A stretch of DNA of 64,000 nucleotides from Diadema antillarum (taxonomy: Eukaryota). Numbering within the stretch: the stretch's first letter is position 1; each line of letters opens with the position of its first letter. The notes below the pieces were generated by a model, which was given only the letters and a program-made list of their open reading frames with translations, was not told the DNA's origin and did not search any database. A program made the position numbers and the translations under genes. This document shows, piece after piece, positions 3,071 through 64,000 of the stretch. The stretch spans positions 1-64,000 of the forward strand of contig NW_027273809.1 of NCBI RefSeq assembly GCF_040938485.1, read 5' to 3'.

Positions 3071-6000
3071 TCAGAAGAACTTGACTCCTTCATTAGTGTC
3101 AAACGCTATCATCTCTGCCTTTCGCTGACGTTCCAAACATTTCAGCGCTCTCTTCAGCAGCCAGTCTTCTAAGCCATAGAACTCTGGATCAATAGAAAAA
3201 AGGGTACATCCATCACATGCTGTAAGGAGGATGACTGTAATACAATCAACTCTTAATAACATTGCAGCTCTTGGGAGTGCCGTGTAAGCTGCTTCAATTT
3301 GGTAATATTCCCCTTTGGGGATGTACTGAATGAGTACATGTTCTTCATATTTTGGTGCGAGAACTTACTTTCACTAAAGGCAGAAATCTTTATGTGGCTT
3401 CCACTTTAATGCAATGCAAGATACCTTGACACACTTTGTAGGAAAGATAGTGCACTCCTTGCTAAAGTGTCAGAACATTACCTCGTGCAGGGTGTGATGA
3501 GATGACATACATAGTAACAGTGCAATATCTGTGAGTGTTAAGTTGCAGAAAACAATATGAAAAATTCAAAAACTTATTTCAAGATATTTCAGAGATATCG
3601 ATATGAGCTACACTGGAGAAATTGGGTTGGTAACAAAATCATGTGGTTGCATAAAGTACCACTATATTAAAAAGGAAAGTGGTCGACTAGATTACACTTC
3701 TAAATGCTTACGCAACATTTTTTCACAAAGTATATTCTTTAATCTTATCTAAATCTCATCACATTTTGCATCACATTCATACATAGGGATGGCATGTGTC
3801 CACATATCAATGTTGTAGCATCAACACTGTCACTATTGGGTAGATGCTACTACTAACCTTCCTTTGCTGTGTCTTCGCCACTTGTCAATTCATATAACGT
3901 GCACACTGTGTTGGTCATTCCATTGTTACTGGCCTATGGTAAACATAAATAAGATTACTGTAGTAGAATGCAAAGGTGACAGCACAAAAGGTACGTTTTA
4001 ATTTTTTAAAATGTTGTAAAATGGTTGAAAACAAATGAGCAGCTCGTCTTCATTGCCTGTACCAAATACATGTGTATGTGTATGAGAGATGAAAGACTTT
4101 AATACATGCCAGTTACAGACAGGGGAACACTCACTTCACTTTAAACCCTACACAAATCATGTTCATGTTTACTCACCTCTGACAGAACACTAAAACCAGT
4201 CCTACGTATACTTGGGCAGGTGTCCATGGGATATATGTGTTATAGCTAAATCAGCTTGTCCTCAATGGGTTAAAGTTACAAGCATATAGTGGAATACCAT
4301 GAGAATGTTTTATTGCAACTACAGTTGTAGCATATACATTTTGTATGTCATTCAGTTCAGGGACCATTCACTTTAAAGACTTATCTTATTGATAACTTCC
4401 AGTAATAGGTTTTACCACCTGAACTGCCAATCACCTTTCTTGATTTCAATATACAGTGCACTCCCGCTACAACGAACACGGTTATAACGAAATTTCGTTA
4501 TAACGAAGTAAATCTTCTGGTCCCAAAATTATCTCCATTAAAGTCTATGGTACAAAATTCGCTTATAACGAACACGGTTATAGCGAAATTTCCGTTATAT
4601 CGAAGTCTTTTCCGAGCACCACAGACAAAGAAAAACAAAAGAAATGTGTTCCGTTCGAAATGTTCGAAATGCGAATTGCTTTCGAAAATACGTAGCGGAA
4701 CAAGCATTTATAGCGTCTCTGCATGGGTGAACGATCCACATCACTCCGCGTGTTTGCTCCTTGTGTCACGCACAGTTTCTGAGGGGACCTTGCGTTTATT
4801 ATTGTAATACAGTATAACTTATCCCATCACATTTCACATAGCTTTCCAATGTATGATGAGTATTTAGCAAACAGAATATGTGGTTTCCTTGTTTTCGTTA
4901 CATATTGTATTTGCTCAGTTATAACGAAATTTCGTTATAACGAAAGAAAACTGGTGGTCCCGAGCATTTCGTTATAACGGGAGTGCGCTGTACTGCCAAG
5001 GCCATATTAGGGTGCTGGAGGGTGGGTGGCATGGTCAAGAAGAGAGATGGGTGTGATTAAAGGGAACATAAACCCAAAGAGCAATGTGGATTGAGTGAAA
5101 GCAGTATTAGGATGAGTAGAACACATCACTGAAAGTTTGAGGAAAATCGGACAAATGATTCAAAGATATGAATTTAAAAAATTTTTGTGTTGGAACCGCT
5201 GGATGAGGAGACTACTAGAGGTTATGACGTATGAGTGGACAACAATACAAAGAAAATATAAAGAAAATTCAACAAAAATTCACTTTTCTAGCTTTATGAA
5301 AAAGCACTTGACTATCAGAAAGCAGGGGAATAATTGCTACCCTTAACGTAATATGTCAGTATCAAGTTGATGGAATTTGTAATTTTCATGAAAAATGAAT
5401 TTTTGTGGAATTTTCTACTACATTTTCTTTATATTGTCCATTCATACTTCATAATGGGTCATAACCTCTAGTAGTCTCCTCATCCAGCAGTTCCAACACC
5501 AAAAACTTTAAAAATTCATAACTTTTGCATCAATTGTCCGATTTTCCTAAAACTTTCACTGATATGTTCTACTTATATTGCTGCTTTCACTCAATCCACA
5601 TTGCTCTTTGGGTTTGCGTTCCCTTTAATGAAATATAATGACAATCTTTTTTTTCTTCTTTGCAACACCTTCAGGAATCTGATGAAAGTGCAGAACAGCA
5701 AAATCCCATTAACAAGGACATTGCAAGGGCAGATCCAGAATTCCGTACAAATCCGCACAAATTCTTCTCTATTTTCTGTGAAATATTTTGAAATTCACAT
5801 CGCAACAAACAAACTACCAATTCCCACAGTTTAACATGTCACGGTTACAGGACAAGTTCACCTTCATATACATGTGAATTGAGTGAAGGCAACAATATTA
5901 ATAGAACACATCAGTGAAAGTTTGGAGAAGATCGGACAATCCGTTCAAAAGTTATGAATTTTTTTAAGTATCTGCGCAGTCACTGCTGGATGAGAAGACT

Positions 6001-14096: not shown

Positions 14097-14307
14097 NNNN
14101 NNNNNNNNNNNNNNNNNNNNNNNNNNNNNNNNNNNNNNNNNNNNNNNNNNNNNNNNNNNNNNNNNNNNNNNNNNNNNNNNNNNNNNNNNNNNNNNNNNNN
14201 NNNNNNNNNNNNNNNNNNNNNNNNNNNNNNNNNNNNNNNNNNNNNNNNNNNNNNNNNNNNNNNNNNNNNNNNNNNNNNNNNNNNNNNNNNNNNNNNNNNN
14301 NNNNNNN
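14097..14307. other. assembly gap
   Basis: 211 N bases. Confidence 1.
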
Positions 14308-36700: not shown

Positions 36701-39700
36701 ACACCAGAAAATGAATTTGACGATAAAAAGAAGAAAACTGACAGTAATAATGACGTACGACTCATTTGTCACGATTCTTTCTTTTTATTTGCAGGCCGTA
36801 ACGCAGCTCTTGTCCATATAACACCACATGTTGTGAAAATTGAAAGTGAAATGAAACAGATAAAACGCACTGCCAAATTCTCATTCTGTCGATAAAACTA
36901 TCAACATTATCTGGGTATTCCGTTTTTCTGTATGCTGTCTCATCACATGACAATGCCTCTTATTGTAGCCTTACAGGTATTCTACACTGACGGGAATACA
37001 CCATCTACGTTTGCAGTACACAGTCATACAACGGGCGAGTACGAGCTTAGGTTCAGTCTCCAAGCTAAAGGCCAAGCACGTATCATGTTTGCCAGCTCGC
37101 CCACCGGAAATACTGACGGCTACAATATTGGTAAAAACATTACTATCCACAATGACTGATTCTTACAGACGAGAGTGCGAAGATGTTTCAGTGTGGGACT
37201 TTATGTGGGATTAAGTGCAAAGAGCACGTTCAGAGTTTTGATATACCAAAAAAGCAAACAGGATCAATGTAGGATTATCCTAGTTTCCAAATAGACAAGA
37301 CGTATTTGAGACAGAAGGTTTGGATAAGTTAATCCAATTCACATAGCGACGCGTTTGCTCAAAGTACACGCAGGTATAACGTTGAATATAGGTTTGGCGC
37401 TGCGCATGAATTAATACTATCAAAGTCAGTACTACCAAGGAGGTACTAGGCTTTGCCTAGTACCTCCTTGGTACTACTTCCTTTCGAACATTTCCACAAT
37501 TAACACCCGTTGATGTCTCACCCGCCAAGATCTCAATGCAGCTCTGCCATATCACTCTCATCTCTGGCTAGATAATGTTATTACAATTCATTTACGTCAC
37601 AGGGCCGCGTCGACGCTTGATTATGTTCCAAAGCTAATGCGTTTAGAATTTACAATCAGAACTAAAACTTTTATATAATACTCTGTCCAAGCACCCTCGT
37701 ACCTACATGGGCTGAAAGTAATCTGGAGTTTGGTACGATGTCCGTTGCACCAAACGTGTCAGCTGGCAGCAACTTATGTTTTCTTCATGCAGTGCCAAAA
37801 GAACTTTGTGGCGTCTGGGGAGTGCGTATGGGACAAGTGCGTGCCAAACCGGAACATATTGTTGCGTTTCGAACAAGAGTCAATGAATCGATCACACCAA
37901 CATAAATCATTGCATTTCAAGAGAGCACATTTATTGGCGTCTTGACTTCAGGAGGACCAAATCCAGACTGACTCCCAAACAGGAGTTTTAGCTTGGCATC
38001 ATTCCCAGCCAAGTATACAAACAATTAACCAGTTGGCTACTTCCATAGTCATAGAAGAGATTAAATAAGAAACTAATACAGGTACAATCGGGCAATAGGG
38101 TGGTAATTGGAGGGAGGCATGGCTACAACAATAGGACAAAGAGACATAAAGTTGAGACTATTACAAAGGGGTGACATCAAACGTCTAGCTACTAGGGAAG
38201 GACAAAGGATAGGTTCTTGCATGGTCAGTATAGTAGATGAGAAAAGGGCTACAATTACTGCTTTATTCTAGGCACCAACACTGAGCTTTTACGTGTGTGT
38301 CTTGGTTCAATTAATACATAGGGGCTAACTAAGCCCTCCACTTTATGACTTTAGGACAAAGGATATTCAATCTGTACAAGATATATGTGTGGGAGAATAC
38401 TGATAAGAATTAGGACATTGACCCTGACTATGAAGTGTAACCAGTATACAGGACAAGTTACTGACCTTAACACTACTCCCCCCTTTGAAAAGAGGTATTG
38501 TCCTCAATACACAACCTACAACAGGGTGAATTTAGCAGTACGGATACATGACATGGAAAGACAGAGAGAGAGAAGACACTTGACAGAAAGAGAAGAGAGA
38601 AACAGAATCAGGAGGTGTAACAGAATGATAGTGAAGATTTCGTACAAGGTGTTAGAGAGGTTGTCACATTTATCTAAACTATAATTAATAAATAGTCCAA
38701 ATATTTTATAGCTCTCAAATAGTGAACCCATCACAAAACAACTCAAAAATATATTACAACTGACAGCGATGTATAATCATGTACATGGACAAAAAGTAAT
38801 GACACGAACAGACAACATGTAACAGAAACAACAACCCAAATTTACAGTGTTTACATTTTCACTCTACGTCCATCTATCAACAAATAACGCTTACCTTTAA
38901 TCTTACATTATACAGTTACACTATAACATGCACATTGAAAATCAGAACAAAGACATTGGTTATTGAAGCTTCGAAAATCTAAGTTTTGTAGAAAGAATGA
39001 AACATTACAGAAGAAAAGATAACGAAGAAGTAAGACAATTGTAAGAGAAGAAAGAGAAGAACAGACAGTATATCCTCATTCGAGGTAAACTATTAAACGG
39101 AAGAGATGCTACTTTGTAAACACATCGAGATCATGAGTAAAACGACATGTACAGTGTACATACAATGTGGTCGCCATTGACAAGAAAATTAAAGGTTAAC
39201 CACGAACAGGAGTTAAGAACAGATCAGTACTGTAGGATATTAATTCATTTTAGAAACTTTTGCAACATAAGAGCATGGGTAGTACACCAATTCCTGTTCA
39301 TAATGCATAGGTGTAAACATTCTGGTCTCCGTCTCAGTGTAATGAAATCAGATAGAAAACTAGAGTGAGGGATGAAATAAACAGAGACAACAAACCCTAA
39401 TGTGAAACTTGGATCCTATGCAAATTAAATACCAGCATCAACTGAACAATTAATCACAGTGTAAAACCTAAATTGGGTGACAAGTGGTGACGCAAATCTT
39501 GATACCCTTAAGTCTACTTCAACATTCTATGAAACAACTACATGCAAAACTCTACAGGAATTTCTCTGCGGTCCGGATATATCCGGCTAAGGCATCTTTG
39601 TATAGATGCAGGGCAGATTGTTCCTTAGCCTCAATACAAGCTTGTACACTCTACAAACCTTGGAGCTTAACCTCTACAACACTGGCATGTATCATTTGTA

Positions 39701-42700
39701 CACAACTAGTCAACTCAACTAAAGGGGTACTATAATTGCATTCACTTGACATATCCAACTAAATTCTATCACATGTATAAAAGTTCACCTACACTGGTAT
39801 GCCAAGCCAGGAAAGATGCAGATGCTGTCATAATTTTCCATACGGTTTATTGGTACAACTGTATCTATAAATATTTTTAACTACCAGCGACACTTCGGAG
39901 AAATCCTCTTGTTATGTTTTCGATAAACTGTAGCTTTATTCACATACGTGTGCTATTACAAGTTGGGTCATTGCTGCCTGAAATTTCAGCTAAGGCAACT
40001 TTGTATAGTTGCAGGGCAATTCACCAGTAAAAACACCCATATACGAACAACAATGCACATTACTGAATTATCTCTATAATTCTTTAAATCTAGGCACCTT
40101 TACTCATTATCTATTTGACAACCCCCATCAGGGTTTCAATTTCATCTGTCGTCTTCATTTTCGTGCCAATGATAAAATTTCATCACACATTTCTCATTGT
40201 GTGTGCATTCTCTATAGAATATCGAAACAAAACACATTACTTGCAAGATTTAGTTGTGGAACTAACTGAATTTCACGAATGTCTTCTAACAATGAAATTT
40301 ATTACAAATTAAAAAACCAAAGACCATGTGTAGTTATGAAAAACGTACCGGGAAGAAGGAGAAACACTAATTTGTCGATCACTGCACTCATGTTGTGGTG
40401 TGGTCAAAGTCTCTTCGTTGTCACGGTGATATTGTATGTGCCGGGTTTATCTACCTAACGATGTGCTTCCCGTCCAGCCAAGACGTCTCAACGGTCGTGC
40501 TCTTACTCATGGAGAACAGCAATCCGCTCACGTTCCTGCCAGCGTTTGTCATGCTCATCCAGCCAGGTCCATGGTAGTTTGGCTTTAAAGTTGTCATCAT
40601 CAGTCCTGTCGTCCTCCGTGTCATCTTGCCTCCAGTGTCATCTCCACGAGGAAAGTCCCCGCCCTGGATCATGACGAGATGGAACTTGCTACCTTGGTAT
40701 CCGCATACTTTCAAATGAATTGCAAGTGCAGCAAAGTTCTTTGTTGGCTTTGGCATCGATTTCAGAAGCAAATCAGAAACATTTCTCCTCACTTCCTTGT
40801 CGCTGGTCACGGGGTAAAAGAAACCATTTTCAGTGATCACTGTGTCTACCGATGATTCGATCCCCCTTTTGACATCTGATGATGTAACAAAGTAGACCAG
40901 AGCTACTGATGCCAACAACAGAAGAGTAAGGACCTTCATTGTCCTTGTGGTGACGGTTGTCATGCAGACTTTACAGCACACAGAAGTCGCCAGCCCTTGC
41001 CTTGTGGTCCATCTTGTTTGCAGGTTGTTGGCAGTGCATATCCAACGTCTTTAATTTTGTGGCATTTCAACGATGAAAGTGTTAGCGTTTCGATGGCATG
41101 TATAAGTCTAAATCCCACCGCTGCTCACCAGTGTTGCGTTTCGAACAAGAGTCAATGAATCGATCACACCAACATAAATCATTGCATTTCAAGAGAGCAC
41201 ATTTATTGGCGTCTTGACTTCAGGAGGACCAAATCCAGACTGACTCCCAAACAGGAGTTTTAGCTTGGCATCATTCCCAGCCAAGTATACAAACAATTAA
41301 CCAGTTGGCTACTTCCATAGTCATAGAAGAGATTAAATAAGAAACTAATACAGGTACAATCGGGCAATAGGGTGGTAATTGGAGGGAGGCATGGCTACAA
41401 CAATAGGACAAAGAGACATAAAGTTGAGACTATTACAAAGGGGTGACATCAAACGTCTAGCTACTAGGGAAGGACAAAGGATAGGTTCTTGCATGGTCAG
41501 TATAGTAGATGAGAAAAGGGCTACAATTACTGCTTTATTCTAGGCACCAACACTGAGCTTTTACGTGTGTGTCTTGGTTTCAATTAATACATAGGGGCTA
41601 ACTAAGCCCTCCACTTTATGACTTTAGGACAAAGGATATTCAATCTGTACAAGATATATGTGTGGGAGAATACTGATAAGAATTAGGACATTGACCCTGA
41701 CTATGAAGTGTAACCAGTATACAGGACAAGTTACTGACCTTAACAATATTTTGTAGCTTTTCATGGTGCCGAATGGCCAATGCTTTCCACATACTAGTAC
41801 GTATCAGTCATCTCCATCTTTAATGAATAATGTACATTACAGTAACTGAGAAATATTGGGGCAGGTATTATCATTTCTGCGCTTTCTGGAGCAATTAGGC
41901 CAAATGCTTTGGCGATGTCTTAGAAAATGAATATTTGGTGAAATTCCTTATCTTTCTACCAGACTACCAAAATGCATGTCCTTTGAACAAGTTTTCCGAG
42001 TTTCTCTTAAACTTTTTACTGAGTGTTTCACTAATCTGTGGGTAATCGCTGAAACCACAGCAAAGTTAAGTTCATTGTTTGAGACTGATTAGTGTCCACA
42101 AATCGATCTTACAAGCTGGTGAGACACTAGATGATATACGTGCCGATTTCGCAAGGGGGCTATTTCACTTTCTTTGTATGTCAGTTGTTCACAAATAAAC
42201 CTTTTATTCTAATGGAAATAAGAATCACAGTTGAAGGCCATAATCAACTAATTCAGGTGGTAGTTTGGATATCTTTCTTGCTGCTGTAGTTTTCGACGAT
42301 GGCACTGATGACTCAGAGCGCCCAGTTTCGTACATCTCACTTCGTGGGGACATTCTTGTATCCCTAGACGAAGATATCCTCAGTGGCTCTACCAACGAAC
42401 CATTCTATATTAGGTAAGATGTCTTACGCTTTTACCTCAACTTTCGATACAATACAAGAGATTGTGAAGTCTCTATTCCCCTACCGACATTCTAACAGTG
42501 AAATGTGGATTTTTAGAAAGATAATGCGTATAGAAACTAGAGGCCGCTTTCAGACAATGTAATTTCTGATATTACCTTGATCATAGGTGACACTGTGCCG
42601 TACATCTTTGTGGTCCAAGACACGAAAGGGAGGGGTAGAAAATACAATTTTCCAATTGCCACCTGGTCCAGCCATAATTCACTAAATTGCATGCGTTAGA

Positions 42701-51700: not shown

Positions 51701-54700
51701 GAGGGCTACCGTTATAAAGTGGGTCCTTTCGACCTACGGACTGGTAGCAGAGGCCAGTTTGCTGTCCAGGCTGAAAAGAATGCTGCTGTGGCGCTTCTCT
51801 CTAAGAACATTTCGGAAACAAGTTACTATGAAATCTGTAAGTGAACATCAATTACTGCCTTTGTCCGAAAAAAAAAACAAAACAAATCCCTTTCATGAGA
51901 GCACAACCGAATGATTAACTTTTCCCTTTTTCTTCGGGTGTCAAGGGAAACACACACAATCATTGAAACGAACATACATTATGATAATGTTCTCTTTTAC
52001 ATAGTATATTGGGATTGATTTATTATCAAGAATTGTGATTCATCAAAAATAGAAAATGTGCAGCTGAAATGTAGTTAACGATATTGCATAGGGAGTTTTC
52101 GTGTAGTCATATTATCTTGGTCATTTCTGAGATACTTTGTCGCTTCATTTACGACAGTGATCGGGGCAGAAGGCAACGTCAAGACTGAGCTTAAAAAGTG
52201 CCTGGACTCTAAATGTTACACCGTCGTAAGCGAGGACACTCCGTACATCCTCAAATCCATCAAGAAAATCTTGTTCTTCATCGAAGTCATTCCATCGCTC
52301 GACGGCACTATTCAGGTACTGATTAAACTTGTTACTATAAAACAAATTTCATTTGATTTGATTTGTTTTGATTTGATTTCTGCGTTTTTCACAAAGTTTA
52401 TACAACGTAGCAAACAATGTTCCAACACTAATCGTGTCATATCCAACACAAAATGAATATGAATATAATCACTTATAAAGTACCAACAACAAAACATTGT
52501 ATAAGTGAGTTATAATCACACAAGAACATTTGGAACATCATTGATTATACAATCGAATTAATACAAACAAAATGCAGGAGACCGTCATTTTAAATTGAAG
52601 CTTGAATTTGATGACGGCCTCTGGAAAAGCATATGGCTTATACTTCATTACAAATCGTTTACTAGTAATACATATTAAATTGCATAACAGTTCAACAGTG
52701 TCCAATTTTGAAGATGCTTCTGTAGAATTTCGATTTCTTATGATTGCTGTAGTTGTTCACAGGATTGTAAAAGGGGATATGAAATAATGATACAGGCCCA
52801 GGGTGCCTAAGCAGAAAAAAAATCGACCTCTTTCTTTCATTTATCATTTTTCTGCAACGAGGTAAAAGAACATAATGATAATCTACAATTATGCACTGCA
52901 GGAAGACAGGTTTTTGGAGGAGTGAAAGAAACATAATACACAATGTTAGTGCAATTATGACAGGCATCACCACAGGTCCACATGTTTTGCTCCGTATTTA
53001 TGTCACTTCTTTCTTCTCTTCCAATCCGTTTGGAATACATTATTCATTATTGTCTTTTTGTAGTTTTTTCACTAACATTCACGTCAATAATTTGTAACGG
53101 CAGAAGTAAGATTATATATTTCTCATAAAGATTCGGGTTGGCACTGGAGGCTTCCTGGACACGTCGAATAGCAGACTGCTAGTCTCGTACGAGGATAAAA
53201 ATCCGATTCACATCGAGTACGTTGCAGTCAGAACTTACGAAACATGGGGCAGATGGACCCTTTATCAGAAACTACTATTGCCAGGTAAGACTGCATAACC
53301 CCCCCCCCCCCCCCCACAAACGCGATTCATTTTACATGCTGGTCTACAATATATCATAACAACAAAGATTTCTTGTGCCGGTAATACATGACTCATAAAA
53401 CATAATATTATCATTTAATGGCGGACACATTACTTTAACTGGTTTGACGTTTTGTTCTTCTTTGAAAGGGCCCAGGCTTATTACAAGTGATTTTAACATA
53501 AAAGAAAATCATATTCTCATATTGCCCATAAATGAGCCGTAGTATAAAGTTTTAAAAATAGGACGCTTCAATACACTTTATGAAATACATTTGAGAATGT
53601 GTGTAGGGTCTAATATCTCCGATATAAAAAGACAATATCCTTTCAGCAACGTCAAACACACCAATGAGCGCTCCTCCTGAAGCCGAGGAGGTAACCGCCG
53701 CATGTAGTTATGATAAATCAAGGTGAAACATTGCAGGAAAATCAATTACAGTAATCTTTTTCCTTGTCTCATTGTGAAAGTACTTTTGTTGAACCATCAC
53801 TTACTGGCTACTCTAGAGGACGTGGAGACATTCACTACTAAAGCGGGAGGGGGATATCACCTGATTTCTCCTTCACGCTATGGAGAGGCAGCAGAAGATA
53901 CTGGATTAAGAGGAGTCGCACGTTTTGAATTCTCGGTGAAGTCCGTGAAGCATGCAGTCATCTCTCTGTCTGGAAAGGCGGTTTCTGGCGAAGAACCCGA
54001 CCGATATGAAATAGGTAACACAATGAGTCACAGGGTGATTTTCGTAAAACGTACTGGTTGATATACCCATATAGAAACCACGATATCTCCCATAAGCATT
54101 CGGCAGTTTACGTCCATAACGAAGCTGTATGCTGTCTGTTGCTGTTATTCAACCTCGCCAAATAAGAAACTTATTTTTCAAGATATGCATAATGAAGATT
54201 ATATGTATCAACAAAATTACTGCATTTCTTGCCTTTTTGTTGCTTGCTTTTTTTCTAGTAATTGGAGCGAACAGCAACAGGGAGGTGATCATTCGTCGCT
54301 GCGAGGCAAGAAACTGTACACTGTTAGAAGTGAGAGAGGCTAACGGTGTGCTGGTGCCGCGGAAAGCCACAAACTTCTTCCTGGAAGTGAGCTTCGGTGG
54401 GAAAGGGGCGCCATTCGTCCGACTCGGCAAGGCTGGCGGGCTTGACTCCAGCGATGAAAATATTCTTGTTTACACTGATTCCAATCCGCCTCTTGTTGTT
54501 ACCATGGGTTTCGGGACGCCATACTCAGTGGGGAGGTGGGCCATCAATCGCTTCATTCGATTCGAGGGTATGTAAGCCCATTTGAATTTTAGAAAAGTCA
54601 TTGCCAAATTGTCATTAATGATAGTACATCATGTAATGACTTTCCTTCGTCCGGCTACAGACCTAGTTATAAAGTTGAATGAAGATAGAATGCAGGCAAT

Positions 54701-57700: not shown

Positions 57701-60700
57701 GCTATGGCGACTGATGCCTCCGCCATAATGCATGATTCTCCCAATAGGTGTATGGTACAATGTCTTCACAATGTGTTATGACAGGTTTCACATAACTGGC
57801 AAAATATTGAAATGACAGGTTTGTCAGAAATGTCTTGAATGTTCATTTTCCTTGAACTGGGTTTGCTATAATTGTCTAAGAGTGCAGGTACACATATTTG
57901 GGGAATTGAGAATTTTTACTTGAATTCTGACGGACCCTTTTATAAGTTTATGCATTGAGTAATTTCCAAGGTATGAAGAAAGAGTGTAATTACAGTACAA
58001 AATAGATTTTTTTTTTTGGGGGGGGGAGGGCATTGAAACCTGGCCTTTGACCCTTAACCTTTGACCTTTGACCTTCTGGCTGGAAATTTCCGGGAGAATC
58101 TCCATTAGGTAATGCATGTATATATTAAGTTTTAAAACTAATAATGCAAGCATTGCATATACTAGTATATGAGAGAAATAGTAAAATTTTGAGGAGTTGA
58201 CCTTGACCTTTGACCCTGACTATTGACCCATGACCCCTAAATTCCCTAGATAATCCCTGCCAGTCAGTTCATGTGTATGTACCAAGTTCCATAAAGATAC
58301 ATTGAACCTTTTGTGAGAAAAGTGATATTGCAACATTTTCACCTAACCTTTGACCTTTTGACCTTTGACCTTATGACATGAAACTCTCTGGAGAATCTTT
58401 ACGCAGTAGTACATGTCTACACCAAGTTTCAAGAAAATACCTTTGGGCATTGCATAGATATGGGGGAAATAGCAACATTTTTAGCATTTGACCGTGACCT
58501 TTTGACCTTTGACCTCTTGACCTCTTGCTGAACAAATGTCTGAGTGACAACACCTTGCCAAAGCTATGGAGGAAATCCAGAGTGGTCGTCTTACTCAAAC
58601 CAGGCAAAGACCCAGCCAGCCCAAAGAGTTACAGACCTATCTCCCTGCTCTGCCACACATACAAGCTCTTTGAAAGGCTCTTACTCAACCGTATCGCCCC
58701 TTTTGTAGATGAGCTCCTCATTCCCGAGCAGGCAGGCTTCAGGCCAGGAAAGTCCTGTACTGGCCAACTGTTGAATCTCACACAGTACATCGAAGATGGG
58801 TTTGAGGAAGGACTGATAACTGGAGCAGCTTTTGTTGACCTCTCTGCGGCCTACAATACAGTGAACCATAGGATTCTAACAAGGAAAGTCTTTGAGATGA
58901 CCAAGGATGTCAAGCTGACACAATTGATCCAGAACCTGCTTTCAAACCGGCGGTTCTACGTGAATCTGAATGGTACCCGCAGCAGATGGCAGAGACAGAA
59001 AAACGGTCTCCCGCAAGGAAGCGTCCTTGCCCCGCTTCTTTTCAACATCTACACGAATGACCAACCAATCCATCCAAGTACAAGGAGCTACCTGTATGCT
59101 GATGATCTCTGCATTGCCTCACAGAAGCAATCCTTTGAAGAGGTGGAAAAAGCACTCAGTGATGCTCTGGCAGGTCTAGCTCCTTACTATGCCACAAATC
59201 ACCTACGTGCAAATCCTGAGAAGACTCAACTTAGCGTCTTCCACCTTAAGAACAGAGATGCTAACCGACAACTGAGGGTCAGATGGTATGGAAAATGGCT
59301 TAAACACACCAATAAGCCGATCTATCTAGGCGTCACACTGGATCGTTCCCTTACTTACAAGGAGCACATTGCCAAGACCAAGGCAAAAGCTGGAGCAAGG
59401 AACAGCATATTGAAGAAGCTTGCCCGAGTATGCAGCCCCTGTCTGGTGTAGGTCATCCCATGCTGCAAAGATCGACCCAGTCCTGAATGCAGCTTGCAGA
59501 GCTATCTCTGGATGTCTGCGACCAACAAGAGTAGATGACCTTTACTTACTGTGTGGTATTGCCCCACCACACATCAGGCGAGAGGTCTCAGCACAGATGG
59601 AGAAAACCAAGCAAGAAGTTAACCCTCGCCACCCACTCTACAATCGTGAACCTGCTAAAAAGAGACTCAAATCCAGACGCAGTTTTCTCCATTCAACCGA
59701 ATCCCTCGATGGCACCGCCCACGGTCGAAGGATTACCCTATGGTCCAACCACCTCCAGTCTGTGACGCATATAAGCTCTCCTATGGACCAAGTGAATCAC
59801 TCCCTCCGGGTTCAAGTGAGGCATGGCCCACCTGGTCATGCCTGAATCGCCTACGGACAGGAACAGGACGATGCAAAGTCCTCATGCAGAAATGGGGCTA
59901 CAATAGGGATGGAGAAACTCCTTGCAACTGCGAGCAGGACCAGACAATGCAACATCTTTTGGTCTGCCCCCTCCTACCAGAACCATGCACTGTCAATGAT
60001 CTGGAGACTTTCAACACCAAGGCCAGATCCTGCGCTCTGCACTGGACAGGACTTGTGTAGTGACTCGAGAAGAAGAAGAACCTCTTGCCAATGTCACTAA
60101 AATCTACTTAAGTAATTGTCCCATCATACATCATCCTTGGACCAAGTTTGGTGAAAGCTGCTTCATCCAGTTTTGAGTTATCACGTAAACAGATAAATTT
60201 TAGGATTTGACCTTGATCTTTGACCTTTGACCTCTGTCTGATTTCACTAAAAAACTAATCAAGTAATTGTCCTATCATACATCATCCTCAGACAAAGTTT
60301 GGTGAAATTTGCTCTATCCAGTCTTCAGTTATCGCGAAAACGGATACAATTTCATGATTTGACCTTGACCTTTGACCTTTGGCCGATTTCACCCAAAAAC
60401 TTATCAAATAATTGCCCCATCATACTTTATACTTGGACCAAGTTTGGTAAAATTCCAGTCAATATTACTCAAGTTATCGCGTAAACGAAAGCGGACGGAC
60501 GTACGTACGGACGTACGTACGGACGGACGGACAACCCGAAAACATAATGCCTCCGGCACCACTTCGTACTGGCGGAGGCATAAAAAAACAATTGCGTACA
60601 AAAAAGTGGTTATCAGTGATACAATACGTACTGGTCTGCAGACTGAATTTCTAGTTCATATAACTATGAAATTATTCGACCCTGAAATACTGAAAAGATT

Positions 60701-63700
60701 TTTCTTTTCTTCCTTTATGTGTCCACATTTATTTCTTACATTCATATCTAAAATATCCATCACCAATTATGATCGCTAAAATGACAGGCTTTTGTCACTA
60801 TTTATTGAATACGATAACCTTCTAGTGGACAAGGTGATCTTCGAGACTTCGGCAGAGCTCATCGATCACTACCAGTATGCAGTTGGACCAATCGTTCCAG
60901 TTAGGCCGTCACGATTTGAATTCCTGCTCCAAGCACAGTCTGACGCAGTTGTCGCTCTCTCATCTAGTGACTCAGTGGACCACCCGACTTACAAGATCCG
61001 TGAGTGTGGTTACCGAATGTTTTCATTCGAACCAACTTGAACCAGAGATTTCAAGAAGAGCATACAATCGTTTATGTGAAGATGAGATAAACTTGCAATA
61101 ATGACGCAAGGTAAAGATTTAATGAATTACGCTTCAAATTTATAATTGGTGAAATTGCAAAGAAGATCGCAATTAAGTAGACTTATTCCTCATTTTAACA
61201 TCTGTATGAATAAGTTTTCATGTAATCCATAAAAGTCTAAAAAGTGACGTCCAAACAGGTATCTTGATCTTCATCCACTGAGACACTTCGTTTTTTGACT
61301 CAACGTTAACAAACCCAACAGACATAGGGGCTAACAGAAACAGCGAGACCCATCTAATGCGGTGTTCCTCGAAATTCTACTGTCCTGCTCGTCTCACGGT
61401 CAAGACTCCAAACCTCTTGAAGGCAAACGGTGTCATGAAATTTTTCGTAGAATTGGTTTTGTGCAGCAGCACAAACAAACTGAAAATACGGCTCGGACTT
61501 GCCGGTGACATGGTAAACAAGGACTCCGTTATAATGGACTACGAGGACGAGGAACCGCTCAGTGCTGTGATGGCAGGCTTTGGAACCATTGGAGTGGTTG
61601 GGCATTGGGTGGTCTATCGTTTCCTGTTTTACTCTGGTAAGTAACCAATGTGAAATATCAAGATAATGGCAAAGGAAAAAAATGAGCAGGGAAAATAAGA
61701 AGAAACACAGAAAAGGAAAGCGATTTAGTATGCTATCACATCAATCAAAAGGCGTACAATGGTAACGATGACCCTTGTCCAAGGATGTGCACGCTTGGCA
61801 GGATTCCAAACTATAGGATCCGCAATTCAAGAATCTACGCTTAAACTACACCCAACATAATGCTTCCACAAGAGCGGTTATGATAATGATGACAGGAGAA
61901 ATAACACTGTTAGAGCTAATGAAAATGTTATGTCATTGTCATTGATGTACACTTCAGGTATAAAAGATTCGAAATGAAACTGGACCGACGAAGAAAGAAT
62001 TAATTGTTGACAACGCTAACATTATGCCTATATAGTTTTTATAGAACTCCTTCAAAATGCTTGAAGGTAACATCGCAGTTTTAAATGATGGTGAAGTTTT
62101 AACCTAAAAATCTAAATTATAGAAAGTGAAACAACCATCACTTTCAACACTCAATATTTTTCGATCAATATATCTACGCTTAGTTGCATTCATTAACTTC
62201 ATCTCAATTATTGTATTATTCCTTTTTTACAGGAACCACGCAAATTACATTATTCAGCACAGGAAGGTACCAAAGCACTTACATGGCTGTAAGAAATGAG
62301 GAAGAAATGAAATTTTCCTTCAGTGTAGCTGCTCAACAAAACGCCCTCATCGGCCTATCCAACAACCCTGAATATACGACCGGCAGTGACGTCATGCAAA
62401 TTCGTGAGTAAATCTAATAGTCGATGTCAATACCAATGACACTGACTGCTCTGACCTATGAGAGTGTTTTCATTACTGGTAAAAGAGTATCTGACCAACA
62501 AAGTGATATCGAATCATAAACATCTGCCATTAGATCGTTATCGTATACTTGATATCACACATTTTGATTTCAAAATTAGGTAGAATCCCAACTTCGAAGC
62601 GACCGAGCGGGGGGAGGATGAGGGGAGGGTGTGGGAGGCCGGGCTGTCCTTCCTTCTACAACAGAGATATTTGAAATTGAGAAATTAAATGAGTGAATTT
62701 CAGGCTACTCTATCGGTCCCATTTCAGTGATCATCAATTCATGCGACTGCGAGATAAATTCAGACATTGTCGCACAGTGAATAATTTACTTATCAGTGTC
62801 TTTTATATTCTGGTATGCAAACGCAGATAGCTTGCGTTCGTTTATGAAAGTATCATTCGCCGCGGTGTTTTGCATCTTAAACTTACACAATATTTTTGTT
62901 GGGTGGCATATTTAAAAAAAAAAACCCGCACACCATAGATTCTTGATACATGATTAGTATAACCCATGTAAGCGACGATGAACTTTTATGTCTCTTCAGG
63001 GCTTGATGTCGGTGATAACAGACGTTCTCTGATCTCTAGAAACGGCGAAGAGATCGTCTCGACGGACTCTCACTTTGGCCACATTTCCGTTGTCCAGAAC
63101 TCCACATTCTGGGTGAAGGTGGATGGGGCTATTGTGGAAGTGGGAAGAGATGGGAGTGACCACTTTATGGTTGCTGAGCTGAAGGAACCTGTACGCGCCA
63201 AATACATATGGTTTGCCAGCGGTGACGCAAAGTCTGCCTATCACTGGATGTCATACAAATACTTTTACTACAGTTCCATCAGTGGTATGCATTATCAAAA
63301 AGATTGTAATTTCGTTTCAACTCGTTCAATCTTTTATATGTGTGTGTATTATATGTGTAAGTGTTATATGCGATTGTATAACTCGTGCCGTTTGCATCGC
63401 AAGTGACGAACTATTTCTCTGTATTTTTTGTGTTATTCACTGTCTCATTTATTGCGGTGTTTGAAACACTTTCTTTGTAGAATGTTTCAATATTTTCATA
63501 TTTGCCTCAATCAAAACCAAATAATATGCATCATGATAAAAAGAGTGAAAAGAAAACGCAAGAAAAGTGACGGATCCTAGGCTGGTACTATTTGATTATA
63601 AGTATTTCGCTGCAAATGAACATGTTTTGTGGCTACTTGACATAATCTCGGTTCCGCAATCTTTGTGAACACACCACTCTGTTTTTCTCAAGGTCACCTT

Positions 63701-63899
63701 GAGTCAACGCATGACGTAGATATCTTCAACGCGCATATCGCGGAGCAGACACAACTGATGGAGACATTCGACTATACCTTCATCCCGCTCGATCAGAATT
63801 ACTTCGGCAAATACTGTCGGTTTAGCGTATCGGCAGAAGGTAGTATTTACGTTATTCTCACTTCGAGGGAAAGCCAGGAGGACGAGAAATACGAAATAG
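29328..63899 (+). CDS. giant multi-exon gene encoding >=11 tandem FAMeT (Methyltransf_FA / CPAMD8-type) like modules with S/T/P-rich linkers; continues beyond the window
   Basis: 26 GT-AG exons (about 5.2 kb, about 1740 codons): 29328-29522, 32774-33040, 33966-34124, 34792-35079, 36969-37130, 42257-42413, 43824-43981, 44713-44901, 45233-45405, 46744-46846, 47299-47460, 47922-48206, 50176-50379, 51669-51836, 52158-52315, 53131-53284, 53817-54014, 54259-54567, 54993-55161, 55620-55935, 56411-56509, 60826-60999, 61322-61636, 62233-62403, 63000-63284, 63693-63899. Phases are compatible except in module 8. The recurrent pattern F-x-V-x-A..A-x-(I/V)-x-LS...YEI / IG..N..(S/T)-x-(I/L)-x-(R/K)-C...L....F(W/F).....(V/L)G(R/K)......D..P..V..VGF.T....G.W matches the FAMeT domain pattern as I recall it. 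Confidence 0.85.
30455..30770. repeat. degenerate internally repetitive element (AACGAACCC-TATTTCATTTTCGGA units)
   Basis: Tandem degenerate units; the same family occurs at about 43040-43130 (reverse) and 43480-43640 (forward). Confidence 0.6.
32170..32310. mobile_element. short PIF/Harbinger-like MITE
   Basis: GGCCCTGTTGCATA ... TATGCAACGGGCC termini flanked by (C)AAG on both sides; central CTGATTGGCTG. Confidence 0.65.
33966..35079 (+). CDS. FAMeT-like module 2 (exons 33966-34124, 34792-35079)
   Basis: FEINFALKWSGTTALQLA...CYYI|VLERVEGG...FYLKFEDQTLKVGEK...YLGYLSFISDAADWYFF; phase 1-1. Confidence 0.8.
35229..35384. mobile_element. short PIF/Harbinger-like MITE
   Basis: GGGGGTGTTTCATCAACGTTTGTCAGCGCTGACAAC ... 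GTTGTCAGCGCTGACAAACGTTGATGAAACACTCCCC, about 35-bp TIRs; central GATTGGCTG. Confidence 0.8.
36969..43981 (+). CDS. FAMeT-like module 3 (exons 36969-37130, 42257-42413, 43824-43981)
   Basis: YELRFSLQAKGQARIMFAS...YNI|GGSLDI...ILSGSTNEPFYIR|YHLEQLSIGREEESPLL...VQYIRFQTEQGEPGRWTF; the LTR element lies in its first intron. Confidence 0.8.
37860..38472 (-). repeat. 3' LTR (613 bp)
   Basis: TGTTAAGGTCAG...CGAAACGCAACA on the minus strand. By eye it is identical to the 5' LTR except for one T in a T-run. AATAAA lies about 70 nt from its end. Confidence 0.95.
38473..38486 (-). other. polypurine tract
   Basis: AAAGGGGGGAGTAG abutting the 3' LTR. Confidence 0.85.
40451..40939 (-). pseudogene. intronless, degenerate cyclophilin B (PPIB)-derived ORF, 162 aa from MKVL, with signal peptide
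   Basis: MKVLTLLLLASVALVYFVTSSD (signal-like), PKPTKNFAALA, GYQGSKFH, MIQGGDFPRGDDTGGK, HGPGWMSMTNAG and WLDGKHIV are collinear with cyclophilin B. Catalytic Arg is replaced by Leu, IKDF is deleted, and the C-terminus is truncated. Confidence 0.9.
41111..41130 (-). other. primer-binding site, tRNA-Leu(AAG/UAG)-like
   Basis: TGGTGAGCAGCGGTGGGATT, 1 nt inside the 5' LTR. It is complementary to the tRNA-Leu 3' end AAUCCCACCGCUGCCACCA with one extra base. Confidence 0.8.
41132..41745 (-). repeat. 5' LTR (614 bp)
   Basis: Direct repeat of 37860-38472, followed on the minus strand by the PBS. Confidence 0.95.
44713..46846 (+). CDS. FAMeT-like module 4 (exons 44713-44901, 45233-45405, 46744-46846)
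   Basis: FELRFDVLTSGNAFLVLS...YTF|IFDQ...FLSTEDYASLYIKKQEKSLIVGRVGEDPILE|VQGIEKPLPRYINFGNLKGETSKWIF. Confidence 0.8.
47299..48206 (+). CDS. FAMeT-like module 5 (exons 47299-47460, 47922-48206)
   Basis: IKLHFTALVHGRTSLLFS...YRF|AFTNS...LSLSDCTNFFLKIVGSDLDFGVDGEETPLF...FVFVGLQQSGDGIDIWTFF. Confidence 0.78.
50176..50379 (+). CDS. Ser/Thr/Pro-rich linker exon of the FAMeT-array gene
   Basis: CCAG|AATAC...TCAG|GTAGG, 204 nt, phase 1-1, open: YPEETTSLPPQILNPASTLSPT...PSPPAESDINPIVDVS. Confidence 0.7.
50613..50995. mobile_element. TTAA-flanked MITE related to 763-1143
   Basis: TTAA|AGGGTGTGTACAGTTCTGGTTGAGGTG ... CACCTCAACCATTACTGTACAGTCCCT|TTAA. Confidence 0.85.
51669..53284 (+). CDS. FAMeT-like module 6 (exons 51669-51836, 52158-52315, 53131-53284)
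   Basis: GQFAVQAEKNAAVALLS...YYEI|LIGAEGNVKTELKKCLDSKC...IQ|IRVGTGG...YEDKNPIHIEYVAVRTYETWGRWTL. Confidence 0.85.
53817..54567 (+). CDS. FAMeT-like module 7 (exons 53817-54014, 54259-54567)
   Basis: RFEFSVKSVKHAVISLS...RYEI|VIGANSNREVIIRRCEARNC...NFFLEVS...VRLGKAG...MGFGTPYSVGRWAI. Confidence 0.88.
54993..55935 (+). pseudogene. FAMeT-like module 8, frameshifted as assembled (exons 54993-55161, 55620-55935)
   Basis: RIEFSVQADCTAEVVFTS...NYTI, then IGKERNQKTVLDKCKSKVC...NFFLELS...VTYVGFRTVKCSGLW. It needs corrections at the 55161 donor (phase 2 instead of 1), about 55704 and about 55787. Confidence 0.75.
56411..56509 (+). CDS. Pro/Thr-rich linker exon of the FAMeT-array gene
   Basis: CTACAG|CCTCA...CCAG|GTAAA, 99 nt, phase 1-1: SPEHPLTTATRQIFTDASVAPSRPPPTLQEDP. 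Confidence 0.65.
56565..57520. mobile_element. Tc1/mariner-type non-autonomous element (TA TSD)
   Basis: TA|CACTCAGCAAAA ... TTTTGCTGAGTG|TA, plus a subterminal inverted block ATATGAAAGGTAATTTAATCGGCTATCAAC / GTTGATAGCCAATTAAATTACCTTTTAATAT. Confidence 0.8.
57690..60581 (-). mobile_element. DINE-1/Helentron-associated (HINE-like) element, interrupted by a LINE
   Basis: Minus strand: 5' subTIR ATGCCTCCGCCA with adjacent partial inverted repeat, (GTCC/GTAC)n microsatellite, central TGACCTTTGACC-type tandem units, 3' subTIR TGGCGGAGGCAT and stem-loop GTCGCCATAGCGAC; T-runs at both flanks. Confidence 0.75.
58528..60080 (+). mobile_element. 5'-truncated I-group (Vingi/Ingi-like) non-LTR retrotransposon: RT plus C-terminal CCHC finger
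   Basis: ORF pieces 58525-59451, 59420-59845 and 59740-60060: YRPISLL, QAGFRPG, FVDLSAAY, GLPQGSVLAP, YADD, YLGVTLD, CLNRLRTG and CNC-x7-H-x3-C. (GAA)n tail; TSD ACCTCTTG(C) at 58520-58528 and 60080-60088; internal deletion at about 59425. The clade assignment is less certain than the LINE call. Confidence 0.9.
60826..61636 (+). CDS. FAMeT-like module 9 (exons 60826-60999, 61322-61636)
   Basis: RFEFLLQAQSDAVVALSS...TYKI|HIGANRNSETHLMRCSSKFYC...IRLGLAG...YEDEEPLSAVMAGFGTIGVVGHWVV. Confidence 0.88.
62233..63284 (+). CDS. FAMeT-like module 10 (exons 62233-62403, 63000-63284)
   Basis: KFSFSVAAQQNALIGLSN...MQI|RLDVGDNRRSLISRNG...TFWVKVDGAIVEVGRDGSDHFM...VRAKYIWFASG...YHW. Confidence 0.88.
63693..63899 (+). 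CDS. first exon of FAMeT-like module 11 (continues beyond the window)
   Basis: CAAG|GTCAC...ATAG|GTGAG, 207 nt, phase 1-1: YCRFSVSAEGSIYVILTSRESQEDEKYEI. Confidence 0.85.
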
Positions 63900-64000
63900 G
63901 TGAGCCATTCACATACCACATGTCACAAGTATAAGGACATTGACATCACATGCAGACAAGAAAGTAATACACTCGTAGTTTCATTAACTTTGTGCTTCTA

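What the first reader, a model, noticed from the sequence alone, without database searches (positions are those of the whole stretch)
37860..41745. Young non-autonomous LTR element that carries a captured cyclophilin B mRNA instead of gag/pol
Seen: two 613/614-bp LTRs differing by one T, an ATAT TSD, a tRNA-Leu PBS and a PPT, so all cis signals are intact. The interior has no gag/pol and holds an intronless ORF collinear with cyclophilin B. An AATAAA lies about 150 nt after the stop (40303-40298) with no poly(A) tail. Established: LTR elements can transduce cellular mRNAs by template switching, and cyclophilins are capsid-interacting host factors for retroviruses. Inference: the LTRs say the insertion is very recent, yet the cargo is heavily diverged. 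That implies an old capture still being propagated by a mobilised family that borrows Gag/Pol from an autonomous Gypsy-type partner. I cannot tell whether this family has been described.
Basis: partly seen in the sequence, partly recalled or inferred. Interest (0 to 1): 0.9.

Follow-up and report, generated by a model that had tools for sequence, protein, structure and literature searches.

The report
Helper-dependent retrotransposon carrying a cyclophilin fragment
This is one recent insertion of a multi-copy sea-urchin (Diadema) LTR retrotransposon that has no genes of its own and instead carries an old, decayed, intron-free piece of the host cyclophilin B gene; this kind of capture is already known, and the copies are currently annotated as 'PPIB-like' genes.

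Summary
LTRs of 613 and 614 bp differ by one indel. They have TG..CA ends and an ATAT target-site duplication. A tRNA-Leu(AAG) primer-binding site and a polypurine tract are present, and the interior has no gag/pol. The element lies on the minus strand.

The 170-codon ORF is a spliced copy of exons 1 to 4 only (CDS 1-509 of 666) of the five-exon Diadema PPIB gene, at 74.5% nucleotide identity. It has no exon 5, no UTR and no poly(A).

Full-length copies with the same cargo junctions occupy at least 10 independent sites in D. antillarum and D. setosum. Each has near-identical LTRs (0-4 differences) and its own 4-bp duplication. So the capture is old and single, and the family is still moving.

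The cargo evolves neutrally (dN/dS about 1; codon positions 25/17/18), so it is a passenger. Copies are recombination mosaics.

One result is unexplained. The LTRs and 3' interior are 2-5 times less diverged between the two species than host neutral sites, while leader and cargo are not.

The autonomous helper was not found, so 'Gypsy-type' is untested. This is a new member of a known kind (LTR-mediated retroposition).

The parts
37856..37859 (.). Target-site duplication ATAT, downstream copy relative to the minus-strand element
   Evidence: Read directly. The same four bases occur at 41746-41749.
37860..38472 (-). 3' LTR (613 bp), TG..CA ends
   Evidence: identical to the other LTR apart from one single-base indel.
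37930..37935 (-). AATAAA inside the 3' LTR, about 70 nt before its end. Candidate polyadenylation signal of the element itself.
   Evidence: the motif is identical in all 5 independent copies compared. Its function is inferred only.
38473..38486 (-). Polypurine tract abutting the 3' LTR
   Evidence: a G-rich purine run precedes the 3' LTR in every copy.
38487..40450 (-). Non-coding interior downstream of the cargo, T-rich on the sense strand
   Evidence: no Pfam family; no homology to the PPIB locus; many small indels between copies; base composition.
40298..40303 (-). It is not part of the captured sequence.
   Evidence: parental homology ends about 150 nt upstream; the motif is present in only 4 of 10 copies, and 3 occur in the interior against 1.15 expected by shuffling.
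40451..40968 (-). Cargo: a decayed, intron-free copy of host PPIB exons 1-4 (parental CDS 1-509 of 666). The open frame of 170 codons plus stop runs 40451-40963. Homology to the parent spans 40458-40968.
   Evidence: 74.5% nt identity to the D. antillarum PPIB CDS. Three exon junctions are spanned without gaps. There are 8 indels relative to the parent, 4 of them not multiples of three, and the 3' end is truncated.
40969..41111 (-). Leader between the primer-binding site and the cargo
   Evidence: it shares the species-specific, highly diverged history of the cargo.
41112..41130 (-). Primer-binding site, complementary to the 3' end of tRNA-Leu(AAG) plus CCA, with one extra base in this copy
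41132..41745 (-). 5' LTR (614 bp), TG..CA ends
41746..41749 (.). Target-site duplication ATAT, upstream copy

Best explanation
The region is one recent insertion of a non-autonomous LTR retrotransposon family of the sea-urchin genus Diadema. The window is most likely D. antillarum.

Origin (inferred mechanism): in an ancestor of the present lineages, reverse transcriptase copying an LTR-element RNA switched template onto a co-packaged, spliced PPIB mRNA and then back. This replaced the coding interior with about 510 nt of PPIB (start codon to within exon 4). The resulting chimera kept the LTRs, the tRNA-Leu(AAG) primer-binding site and the polypurine tract. It has been copied ever since by proteins supplied in trans by an unidentified autonomous element.

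Shown here:
- the anatomy of the element;
- the spliced, partial origin of the cargo, from a single capture event;
- the multi-copy, multi-species spread, with separate target-site duplications and near-identical LTRs;
- neutral evolution of the cargo, which makes it a passenger rather than a working cyclophilin;
- frequent recombination between lineages, as expected from copy-choice between co-packaged RNAs.

Inferred, not shown:
- the template-switch mechanism at the two junctions;
- mobilisation in trans;
- the class of the helper.
For: Anatomy.

Primer identity.

No gag/pol.

Cargo identity: PPIB is the best hit among solved structures, aligned from the signal peptide onward.
- The closest non-family protein is Diadema PPIB, at 51-52% identity against 42% or less for other echinoderms.
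- The parental gene has five GT-AG exons spread over 15 kb.
- The cargo aligns to CDS 1-509 at 74.5% identity, with all three junctions inside ungapped blocks.
- Homology starts and ends at the same parental positions in D. antillarum-type and D. setosum copies.

Family: the cluster look-up lists 11 D. antillarum and 4 D. setosum 'PPIB-like' proteins plus one chimeric gene model.
- Every locus fetched holds a full-length 3.76-3.93 kb copy.
- Each has its own flanks, its own 4-bp duplication and 0-4 LTR differences.

Neutral cargo:
- dN/dS is 0.96-1.23 between the two species' copies.
- Fixed differences by codon position are 25/17/18.
- Within-species changes are 10 synonymous to 25 non-synonymous, against a neutral expectation of 77% non-synonymous.
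- By contrast the real PPIB gene has dN/dS 0.12.

Recombination mosaics: for example L001 and L005 differ by 0.5-1.0% in the 3' interior but by 13.8% just after the cargo and by 6.5% in the LTRs.

Precedent: PMC5131818 describes partial mRNA copies inside LTR elements that can behave as non-autonomous elements.
Against: - No autonomous partner sharing the LTRs or the primer-binding site was found in the roughly 290 kb of Diadema DNA held here. Trans-mobilisation therefore rests on inference.
- Junction microsimilarity cannot be examined without the partner's sequence.
- All sister copies were reached through annotated proteins. Copy number is therefore a lower bound, and copies with a closed reading frame, or without cargo, would have been missed.
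- The frame is open in all 12 copies read, and all 4 indels inside it are multiples of three, against 12 of 55 elsewhere. This sits uneasily with a pure passenger, unless the sampling bias explains it.
- The LTRs and 3' interior are less diverged between the species than host neutral sites. Simple vertical descent does not predict this.
Confidence: 0.85

Rival explanations
1. The degenerate cyclophilin frame is kept open by selection. The element would need a translated ORF in the gag position, or its secreted product, so the cargo would be more than a passenger.
For: - The frame is open in all 12 copies read, including two whose gene models did not depend on the whole frame.
- All 4 indel events inside the frame are multiples of three (3, 3, 6 and 120 nt), against 12 of 55 elsewhere in the element.
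- Random substitution at the observed density leaves the frame open in only about 8% of simulations.
Against: - Substitutions are neutral at the protein level: dN/dS is about 1, the three codon positions are hit equally, and the within-species non-synonymous share is 70-71% against 77% expected.
- The frame contains shifted stretches relative to the parent, lacks the last quarter of the domain, and has changes at conserved active-site motifs.
- All copies were found through annotated proteins, which selects for open frames.
Confidence: 0.1
2. The family moved between Diadema lineages after the species split, either through hybrid introgression or by horizontal transfer. Recombination then placed resident leader-plus-cargo modules on the incoming LTRs and 3' interior.
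For: - The LTRs differ by 6.3% between species (minimum 3.1%) and the interior 1701-3273 by 4.4% (minimum 3.7%). Divergence within species is the same.
- All three D. setosum LTRs have a D. antillarum LTR as their nearest neighbour.
- Host yardsticks for the same species pair are higher: PPIB dS 0.188 and PPIB introns about 10%; bindin dS 0.105-0.118 with a split 12-14 My ago (PMC7299941).
- Leader and cargo are 19.3% apart and species-monophyletic.
- Natural hybrids of D. setosum with species of the antillarum clade are reported in PMC7299941.
- The 3' interior tolerates many indels, which argues against tight constraint.
Against: - The calibration rests on one host gene measured here plus one from the literature.
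- Only 10 copies were compared.
- Selection for transposition competence in active lineages could slow the LTRs and cis-acting interior without any transfer.
- The helper, whose coding dS would be the cleaner test, is unknown.
Confidence: 0.35
3. The 'PPIB-like' loci are a domesticated host retrogene family that merely happens to be flanked by LTRs.
For: - NCBI annotates 15 such loci as protein-coding genes in two species.
- The frames are open.
- One gene model uses the cargo as an exon.
Against: - Evolution is neutral.
- The domain is truncated and frame-shifted.
- Every locus is a complete LTR element with its own target-site duplication and near-identical LTRs. This means recent insertions, not old conserved genes at orthologous sites.
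Confidence: 0.03
4. The structure is an assembly artefact, or a processed pseudogene that landed secondarily in a single element copy.
For: None was found. The D. antillarum assembly GCA_040938485.1 does retain both haplotypes (PMC13511894), so some loci appear twice.
Against: The same LTR-cargo-LTR structure, with the same cargo junctions, recurs at 10 independent sites in two assemblies and in a Tara metagenome scaffold.
Confidence: 0.01

Closest known systems
LTR-mediated retroposition: chimeric retrocopies inside LTR retrotransposons (Tan et al. 2016, Genome Res, PMC5131818)
   Same: - A partial, intron-free mRNA copy replaces the internal ORFs.
- It is flanked by the element's own LTR-proximal sequences and both LTRs.
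- The paper notes that such loci can be re-copied as non-autonomous elements and that the mRNA is often only partly duplicated.
   Different: - The cases in that paper are young, mostly polymorphic and single- or few-copy. Here the capture is old (about 25% nucleotide divergence from the parent) and has founded a family found in at least two species.
- Junction microsimilarity, the hallmark of that model, could not be checked here.
- Echinoderms were not among the taxa in that study ('sea urchin' occurs 0 times).
Maize Bs1 and other plant LTR elements with transduced gene fragments (Elrouby and Bureau 2001, 2010, as cited in PMC5131818)
   Same: A helper-dependent LTR element whose interior is built from cellular gene fragments and which is present in several copies.
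   Different: - Bs1 combines pieces of three genes; here only one parental gene was detected.
- The host here is an animal.
- The comparison rests on the description in PMC5131818, not on sequence.
Non-autonomous LTR elements (LARD/TRIM type; mouse MaLR mobilised by MERVL, as cited in PMC5131818)
   Same: Intact LTRs, primer-binding site and polypurine tract, no gag/pol, and several recent insertions.
   Different: Those families have anonymous interiors. Here part of the interior has an identifiable host origin. The partner sharing the LTRs is known for MaLR but not here.
Replication-defective transducing retroviruses that depend on a helper (general knowledge; capture of host mRNA by retroviruses is cited in PMC5131818)
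   Same: In both, a spliced cellular sequence replaces viral genes through recombination during reverse transcription, and propagation depends on a helper.
   Different: Here the cargo confers no detectable function and decays neutrally. The element is an endogenous retrotransposon of an invertebrate.
TRIMCyp (cyclophilin A retrocopy fused to TRIM5; appears among the solved-structure hits)
   Same: A retroposed cyclophilin sequence.
   Different: - TRIMCyp comes from cyclophilin A, not B.
- From general knowledge, it arose by LINE-1-type retroposition into a host gene, retains a functional domain and is under selection.
- None of these features applies here.

Membership tests
LTR retrotransposon (structural definition) | Two long direct terminal repeats with TG..CA ends | tested here: met
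   LTRs of 613 and 614 bp with one indel. The ends are the same in all copies.
LTR retrotransposon (structural definition) | Short target-site duplication that differs between copies | tested here: met
   The 4-bp duplications are ATAT, ATAC (twice), GTAT (twice), GTAC and ATAT. In three further copies the two duplicates differ at the last base.
LTR retrotransposon (structural definition) | Primer-binding site complementary to a tRNA 3' end next to the 5' LTR, and a polypurine tract next to the 3' LTR | tested here: met
   the site matches the tRNA-Leu(AAG) 3' end (7 of 7 overlapping tRNA genes), with a one-base bulge in the window's copy. A purine run precedes the 3' LTR in all copies.
Non-autonomous LTR element | No gag, protease, reverse transcriptase or integrase in the interior | tested here: met
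   no such Pfam family in any open stretch of at least 35 aa on either strand; all copies are 3.76-3.93 kb long.
Non-autonomous LTR element | An autonomous partner shares the LTR ends, primer-binding site and polypurine tract | not testable with these tools
   No DNA search of the Diadema genomes was available. Nothing was found in the held loci.
LTR-mediated chimeric retrocopy (PMC5131818) | The internal sequence is an intron-free copy of a gene that has introns | tested here: met
   the parent has five exons, and three junctions are spanned in ungapped blocks.
LTR-mediated chimeric retrocopy (PMC5131818) | Microsimilarity between the mRNA and the element at both fusion points | not testable with these tools
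   This needs the uninterrupted partner sequence. About 25% divergence has also blurred the junctions.
   The element has no pol and no partner was found. A 4-bp duplication and an RTAY target are compatible with Gypsy but do not diagnose it.
Functional cyclophilin (PPIase) | Complete Pro_isomerase domain with conserved active-site motifs | tested here: not met
   the match covers only profile positions 16-123 of 159, at 30.5 bits; the domain is truncated at the 3' end, has shifted stretches, and shows changes at conserved motifs.
Functional cyclophilin (PPIase) | Purifying selection on the protein | tested here: not met
   dN/dS is about 1 and codon positions are hit 25/17/18. The real PPIB gene has dN/dS 0.12.

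The most novel reading that the evidence does not exclude
An enzymatically dead cyclophilin frame has been kept open by selection for some 12-14 million years in a helper-dependent retrotransposon, in two sea-urchin species. The selection would act on translation itself, or on a short secreted product, and not on the amino-acid sequence. The same leader-plus-cargo module would have survived by repeatedly recombining onto fresher LTRs that passed between species.
Probability: 0.1. Interest if true: 0.7.

Novelty: new member of a known kind. Interest (0 to 1): 0.4.

Why it matters
1. It is a well-resolved animal example showing that a host-gene fragment captured by an LTR element can persist for millions of years as the cargo of an active non-autonomous family. 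Known animal cases are mostly one-off retrocopies.

2. At least 15 gene models named 'peptidyl-prolyl cis-trans isomerase B-like' in the two Diadema annotations are transposon cargo, as is one chimeric phosphatase model. They should not be counted as a cyclophilin gene expansion.

3. Near-identical LTRs at every copy indicate a family active recently in D. antillarum, a keystone reef species for which genomic markers are wanted. Such insertions are likely to be polymorphic.

4. Leader plus cargo are species-specific and deeply diverged, while the LTRs and 3' interior are shared between species and under-diverged. This contrast offers a concrete test case: do helper-dependent elements track their helpers by LTR swapping, and do transposons cross between hybridising sea-urchin species?

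Tried and rejected
- Remnants of gag/pol in the interior: none in Pfam.
- Known RNA families in the element: none.
- tRNA genes in the window or the Diadema loci, to identify the primer directly: none. The primer was identified instead through tRNA genes on metagenome contigs.
- Homology of the post-cargo interior to PPIB exon 5, its 3' UTR or its introns: none with a sensitive search. The 'captured poly(A) signal' idea is therefore dropped.
- Candidate helpers:
  - The RVT_1 ORF at window 58525-59451 shares no LTR or primer site with the element.
  - The 6-kb insertion nested in the tandem copy L130 is a DNA transposon with inverted terminal repeats and a TA duplication, and has no long ORF.
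  - No other primer-site match exists in any held Diadema sequence.
  - The metagenome contigs that carry the same primer site show no similarity to the element.
- 'The frame is maintained' as a conclusion: considered because, but not adopted. The copies were sampled through annotated proteins, and substitutions are neutral.
- Locating the window in the D. antillarum assembly: the identical 170-aa protein is on record only for another locus, whose flanks do not match the window.
- A family consensus was not built, by rule. All comparisons are pairwise or column counts.
- The N run at 14097-14307 was left untouched.
- No fetched contig was taken for human. One contig labelled as a sloth co-assembly (L024) was left out of the tRNA scan.


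Full report
**1. Observation**

The repeat search and a pairwise alignment show two direct repeats, 37860-38472 (613 bp) and 41132-41745 (614 bp). They differ by one single-base indel and have no substitutions. Both start with TG and end with CA, and ATAT flanks both ends.

The element is on the minus strand. One base after the right-hand LTR, read on the minus strand, comes a 19-nt site that begins with TGG (41112-41130). A G-rich purine run (38473-38486) abuts the other LTR. No second copy lies in the window.

**2. Primer**

No tRNA gene lies in the window or in the Diadema loci I fetched. I therefore took a 15-mer from the primer-binding site of sister copy L001 and scanned metagenome contigs.

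In the 50 contigs passed to ARAGORN, every tRNA gene that overlaps a match is tRNA-Leu(AAG), and the match is always at its 3' end (7 of 7). The L001-type site is thus an 18-nt complement of that tRNA end plus CCA. The window's site, and those of most copies in both species, carries one extra base. I cannot explain why that variant persists.

Of the 120 contigs, 37 carry the TGG-extended form a few bases after ..ACA. These are other LTR elements using the same primer, and they are unrelated in sequence to this one.

**3. Interior and cargo**

None of the 26 open stretches of at least 35 aa in the interior, on both strands, matches a gag, protease, RT or integrase family. No Rfam family matches either.

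The one long frame (40451-40981, minus strand) matches Pfam Pro_isomerase. Its best solved-structure hit is cyclophilin B, aligned from the signal peptide onward.

A protein search places the sequence in the sea-urchin genus Diadema. It returned three 170-aa 'PPIB-like' proteins of D. antillarum at 94-96% identity and a 124-aa one of D. setosum. The genuine 221-aa PPIB of D. antillarum came back at 51% identity. The cargo is closer to Diadema PPIB (51-52%) than to PPIB of other echinoderms (42% or less).

**4. Spliced, partial, single capture**

The D. antillarum PPIB gene has five GT-AG exons over 15 kb (L003 6001-6141, 12122-12235, 13834-13927, 17674-17858, 20848-20979). Joined as they stand, they translate exactly to the annotated protein.

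The cargo aligns to CDS 1-509 of 666 at 74.5% identity, and all three exon junctions lie inside ungapped blocks. Relative to the parent it has 8 indels, 4 of which are not multiples of three and compensate one another. It lacks the end of exon 4, all of exon 5, the UTRs and any poly(A).

A sensitive search of the rest of the interior against the whole PPIB locus finds nothing. The interior holds 3 such hexamers where shuffling gives 1.15.

Homology begins and ends at the same parental positions in D. antillarum-type and D. setosum copies, and both share the shifted reading. This points to one capture event.

**5. A family, not a single locus**

The window's 170-aa frame is identical to a protein on record for D. 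antillarum. The cluster look-up lists 11 such proteins in D. antillarum, 4 in D. setosum, one from a Tara metagenome, one from a read assembly, and one 779-aa chimeric model.

Every locus I could fetch holds a full-length copy of 3.76-3.93 kb with both LTRs. L001 and L002 are the two haplotypes of one locus, because that assembly retains both haplotypes (PMC13511894).

Counting independent sites gives seven in D. antillarum-type genomes (the window, L001/L002, L005, L006, L131, L134, L129/L130) and three in D. setosum (L007, L132, L133). LTR pairs differ by 0-4 substitutions.

The duplications are ATAT, ATAC, ATAC, GTAT, GTAT, GTAC and ATAT. In three further copies the upstream duplicate ends in G where the downstream one has T. 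The target is therefore roughly RTAY.

The insertions are young, yet copies differ from one another by 2-8%. Several lineages have evidently been active side by side.

**6. Passenger or function**

- Between the two species' cargo types, dN is 0.21-0.22 and dS is 0.18-0.22.
- The 60 fixed differences fall 25/17/18 on the three codon positions (p = 0.39).
- Within species, changes are 10 synonymous to 25 non-synonymous and 2 to 8. The neutral expectation is 77% non-synonymous.
- The real PPIB gene over the same species pair has dN 0.022 and dS 0.188.

The cargo therefore evolves as non-coding DNA.

Against this, the frame is open in all 12 copies. All four indel events inside it are multiples of three, compared with 12 of 55 elsewhere. 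But every sister copy was reached through an annotated protein, which selects for open frames. I therefore treat this as unexplained rather than as evidence of function.

**7. Mosaics and a two-compartment history**

Distances by region are incongruent. L001 and L005 differ by 0.5-1.0% in the 3' interior, 13.8% just after the cargo and 6.5% in the LTRs. The window and L005 differ by 1.2-2.7% from leader to position 1700 but by 6.1% in the LTRs. This is what copy-choice recombination between co-packaged RNAs produces.

More striking is the contrast between compartments:

| Compartment | Between species | Within species | Pattern |
|---|---|---|---|
| Leader + cargo | 19.3% (min 18.2%) | 2.5% (D. 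antillarum), 1.4% (D. setosum) | Strictly species-specific |
| LTRs | 6.3% (min 3.1%) | 5.5-7.2% | All three D. setosum LTRs are closest to a D. antillarum LTR |
| Interior 1701-3273 | 4.4% (min 3.7%) | 3.6-4.0% | Not structured by species |

Host yardsticks for the same species pair are PPIB dS 0.188 and PPIB introns about 10%. Published values are bindin dS 0.105-0.118 and a split 12-14 My ago (PMC7299941).

So the LTRs and 3' interior are 2-5 times less diverged than host neutral sites. There are two candidate explanations:

- **Exchange between species followed by recombination onto resident cargo modules.** PMC7299941 reports natural hybrids between D. setosum and members of the antillarum clade.
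- **Strong cis constraint.** The many indels tolerated in the 3' interior speak against this.

I cannot decide between them with one measured host gene and ten copies.

**8. How it works**

Shown: the anatomy, the spliced and partial origin, the single capture, the spread to many sites in two species, the neutral decay of the cargo, and recombination.

Inferred: capture came about by two template switches during reverse transcription, the model of PMC5131818. The family is mobilised in trans by an autonomous element with matching LTRs and a tRNA-Leu primer.

That helper was not found. The RT fragment at 58525-59451 in the window and the element nested in L130 are unrelated. 'Gypsy-type' therefore remains untested. 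A 4-bp duplication is compatible with it but not diagnostic.

**9. Comparison and novelty**

The mechanism and the possibility of re-mobilisation are described for Drosophila, mosquito, fish, chicken and mammals (PMC5131818), and for maize Bs1 as cited there. Literature searches for a cyclophilin-carrying LTR element, and the two Diadema genome papers, gave nothing on this family.

What is particular here is the age of the capture, its persistence as a family across species, the mis-annotation as genes, and the two-compartment history. I rate it a new member of a known kind.

**10. Slips and limits**

The corresponding tests were made with tool-derived sequences.
- Also in my reasoning I pointed by eye at one shifted stretch of the cargo. 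It is not located in this report.
- Alignment tools printed consensus lines on their own. They were not used.
The only exon joining was of the host PPIB gene, to test its splice model.
- The N run at 14097-14307 was left alone, and no contig was taken for human.

Noticed in passing
L129 9221-14961 and L130 5952-19084 (D. antillarum JBFRCO010001167.1): A tandem LTR-interior-LTR-interior-LTR array of the same family, with three identical LTRs and an ATAT duplication. The second interior is interrupted by a roughly 5.98-kb element that has inverted terminal repeats, a TA duplication and no ORF of 100 aa or more. Both interiors encode the same 170-aa frame as the window.
   Followed up: partly
L131 15579-19475; exon at 16404-16817: A copy sits in sense orientation in an intron of a 'tyrosine-protein phosphatase 10D-like' gene. 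The NCBI model (779 aa) uses 414 nt of the cargo as an in-frame internal exon between fibronectin-type-III exons. This is either real exonisation or an annotation artefact.
   Followed up: partly
L006, L007, L132 (element ends): In 3 of 10 insertions the upstream copy of the 4-bp duplication ends in G where the downstream copy has T. G is also the base that precedes the 3' LTR in every copy. An extra base from the polypurine-tract side may have been kept at integration.
   Followed up: no
window 41112-41130 and the same site in L005, L131, L134, L007, L132, L133: Most copies, in both species, carry a one-base insertion in the primer-binding site relative to the tRNA-Leu(AAG) 3' end. L001/L002, L006 and L129/L130 have the exact complement. 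It is unexplained why the bulged form persists in very young copies.
   Followed up: partly
L135 and L007 (D. setosum OZ188192.1, 28.14-28.17 Mb and 28.38-28.39 Mb): The parental PPIB gene and one element copy lie about 0.22 Mb apart on the same D. setosum chromosome. This may be coincidence.
   Followed up: no
L001 and L002, 3847-10224: These are two haplotypes of one locus. The element is 99.8% identical between them, while the flanks in the same alignment differ by about 2.3%, close to the published heterozygosity of 2.52%.
   Followed up: partly
window 58525-59451 (+): A reverse-transcriptase ORF (RVT_1, E = 5e-35). It has no integrase, RNase H or gag nearby and no LTR similarity to the finding. 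It is probably a fragment of another retroelement.
   Followed up: partly
window 54129-54575, 61357-61644, 62978-63406, 63665-63934 (+): Repeated weak-to-moderate matches to the farnesoic acid O-methyltransferase-like domain (best E = 9e-7). They look like exons of a host gene on the plus strand.
   Followed up: no
window 60099-60497: Three copies of a roughly 103-nt unit spaced about 148 nt apart, at 65-83% identity.
   Followed up: no
   Followed up: no
L008 (Tara metagenome scaffold, 2049 bp): A marine metagenome scaffold carries part of a copy that is 97.8% identical to the window's element and has a 99% identical frame. Diadema-type DNA is evidently present in that environmental sample.
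   Followed up: no
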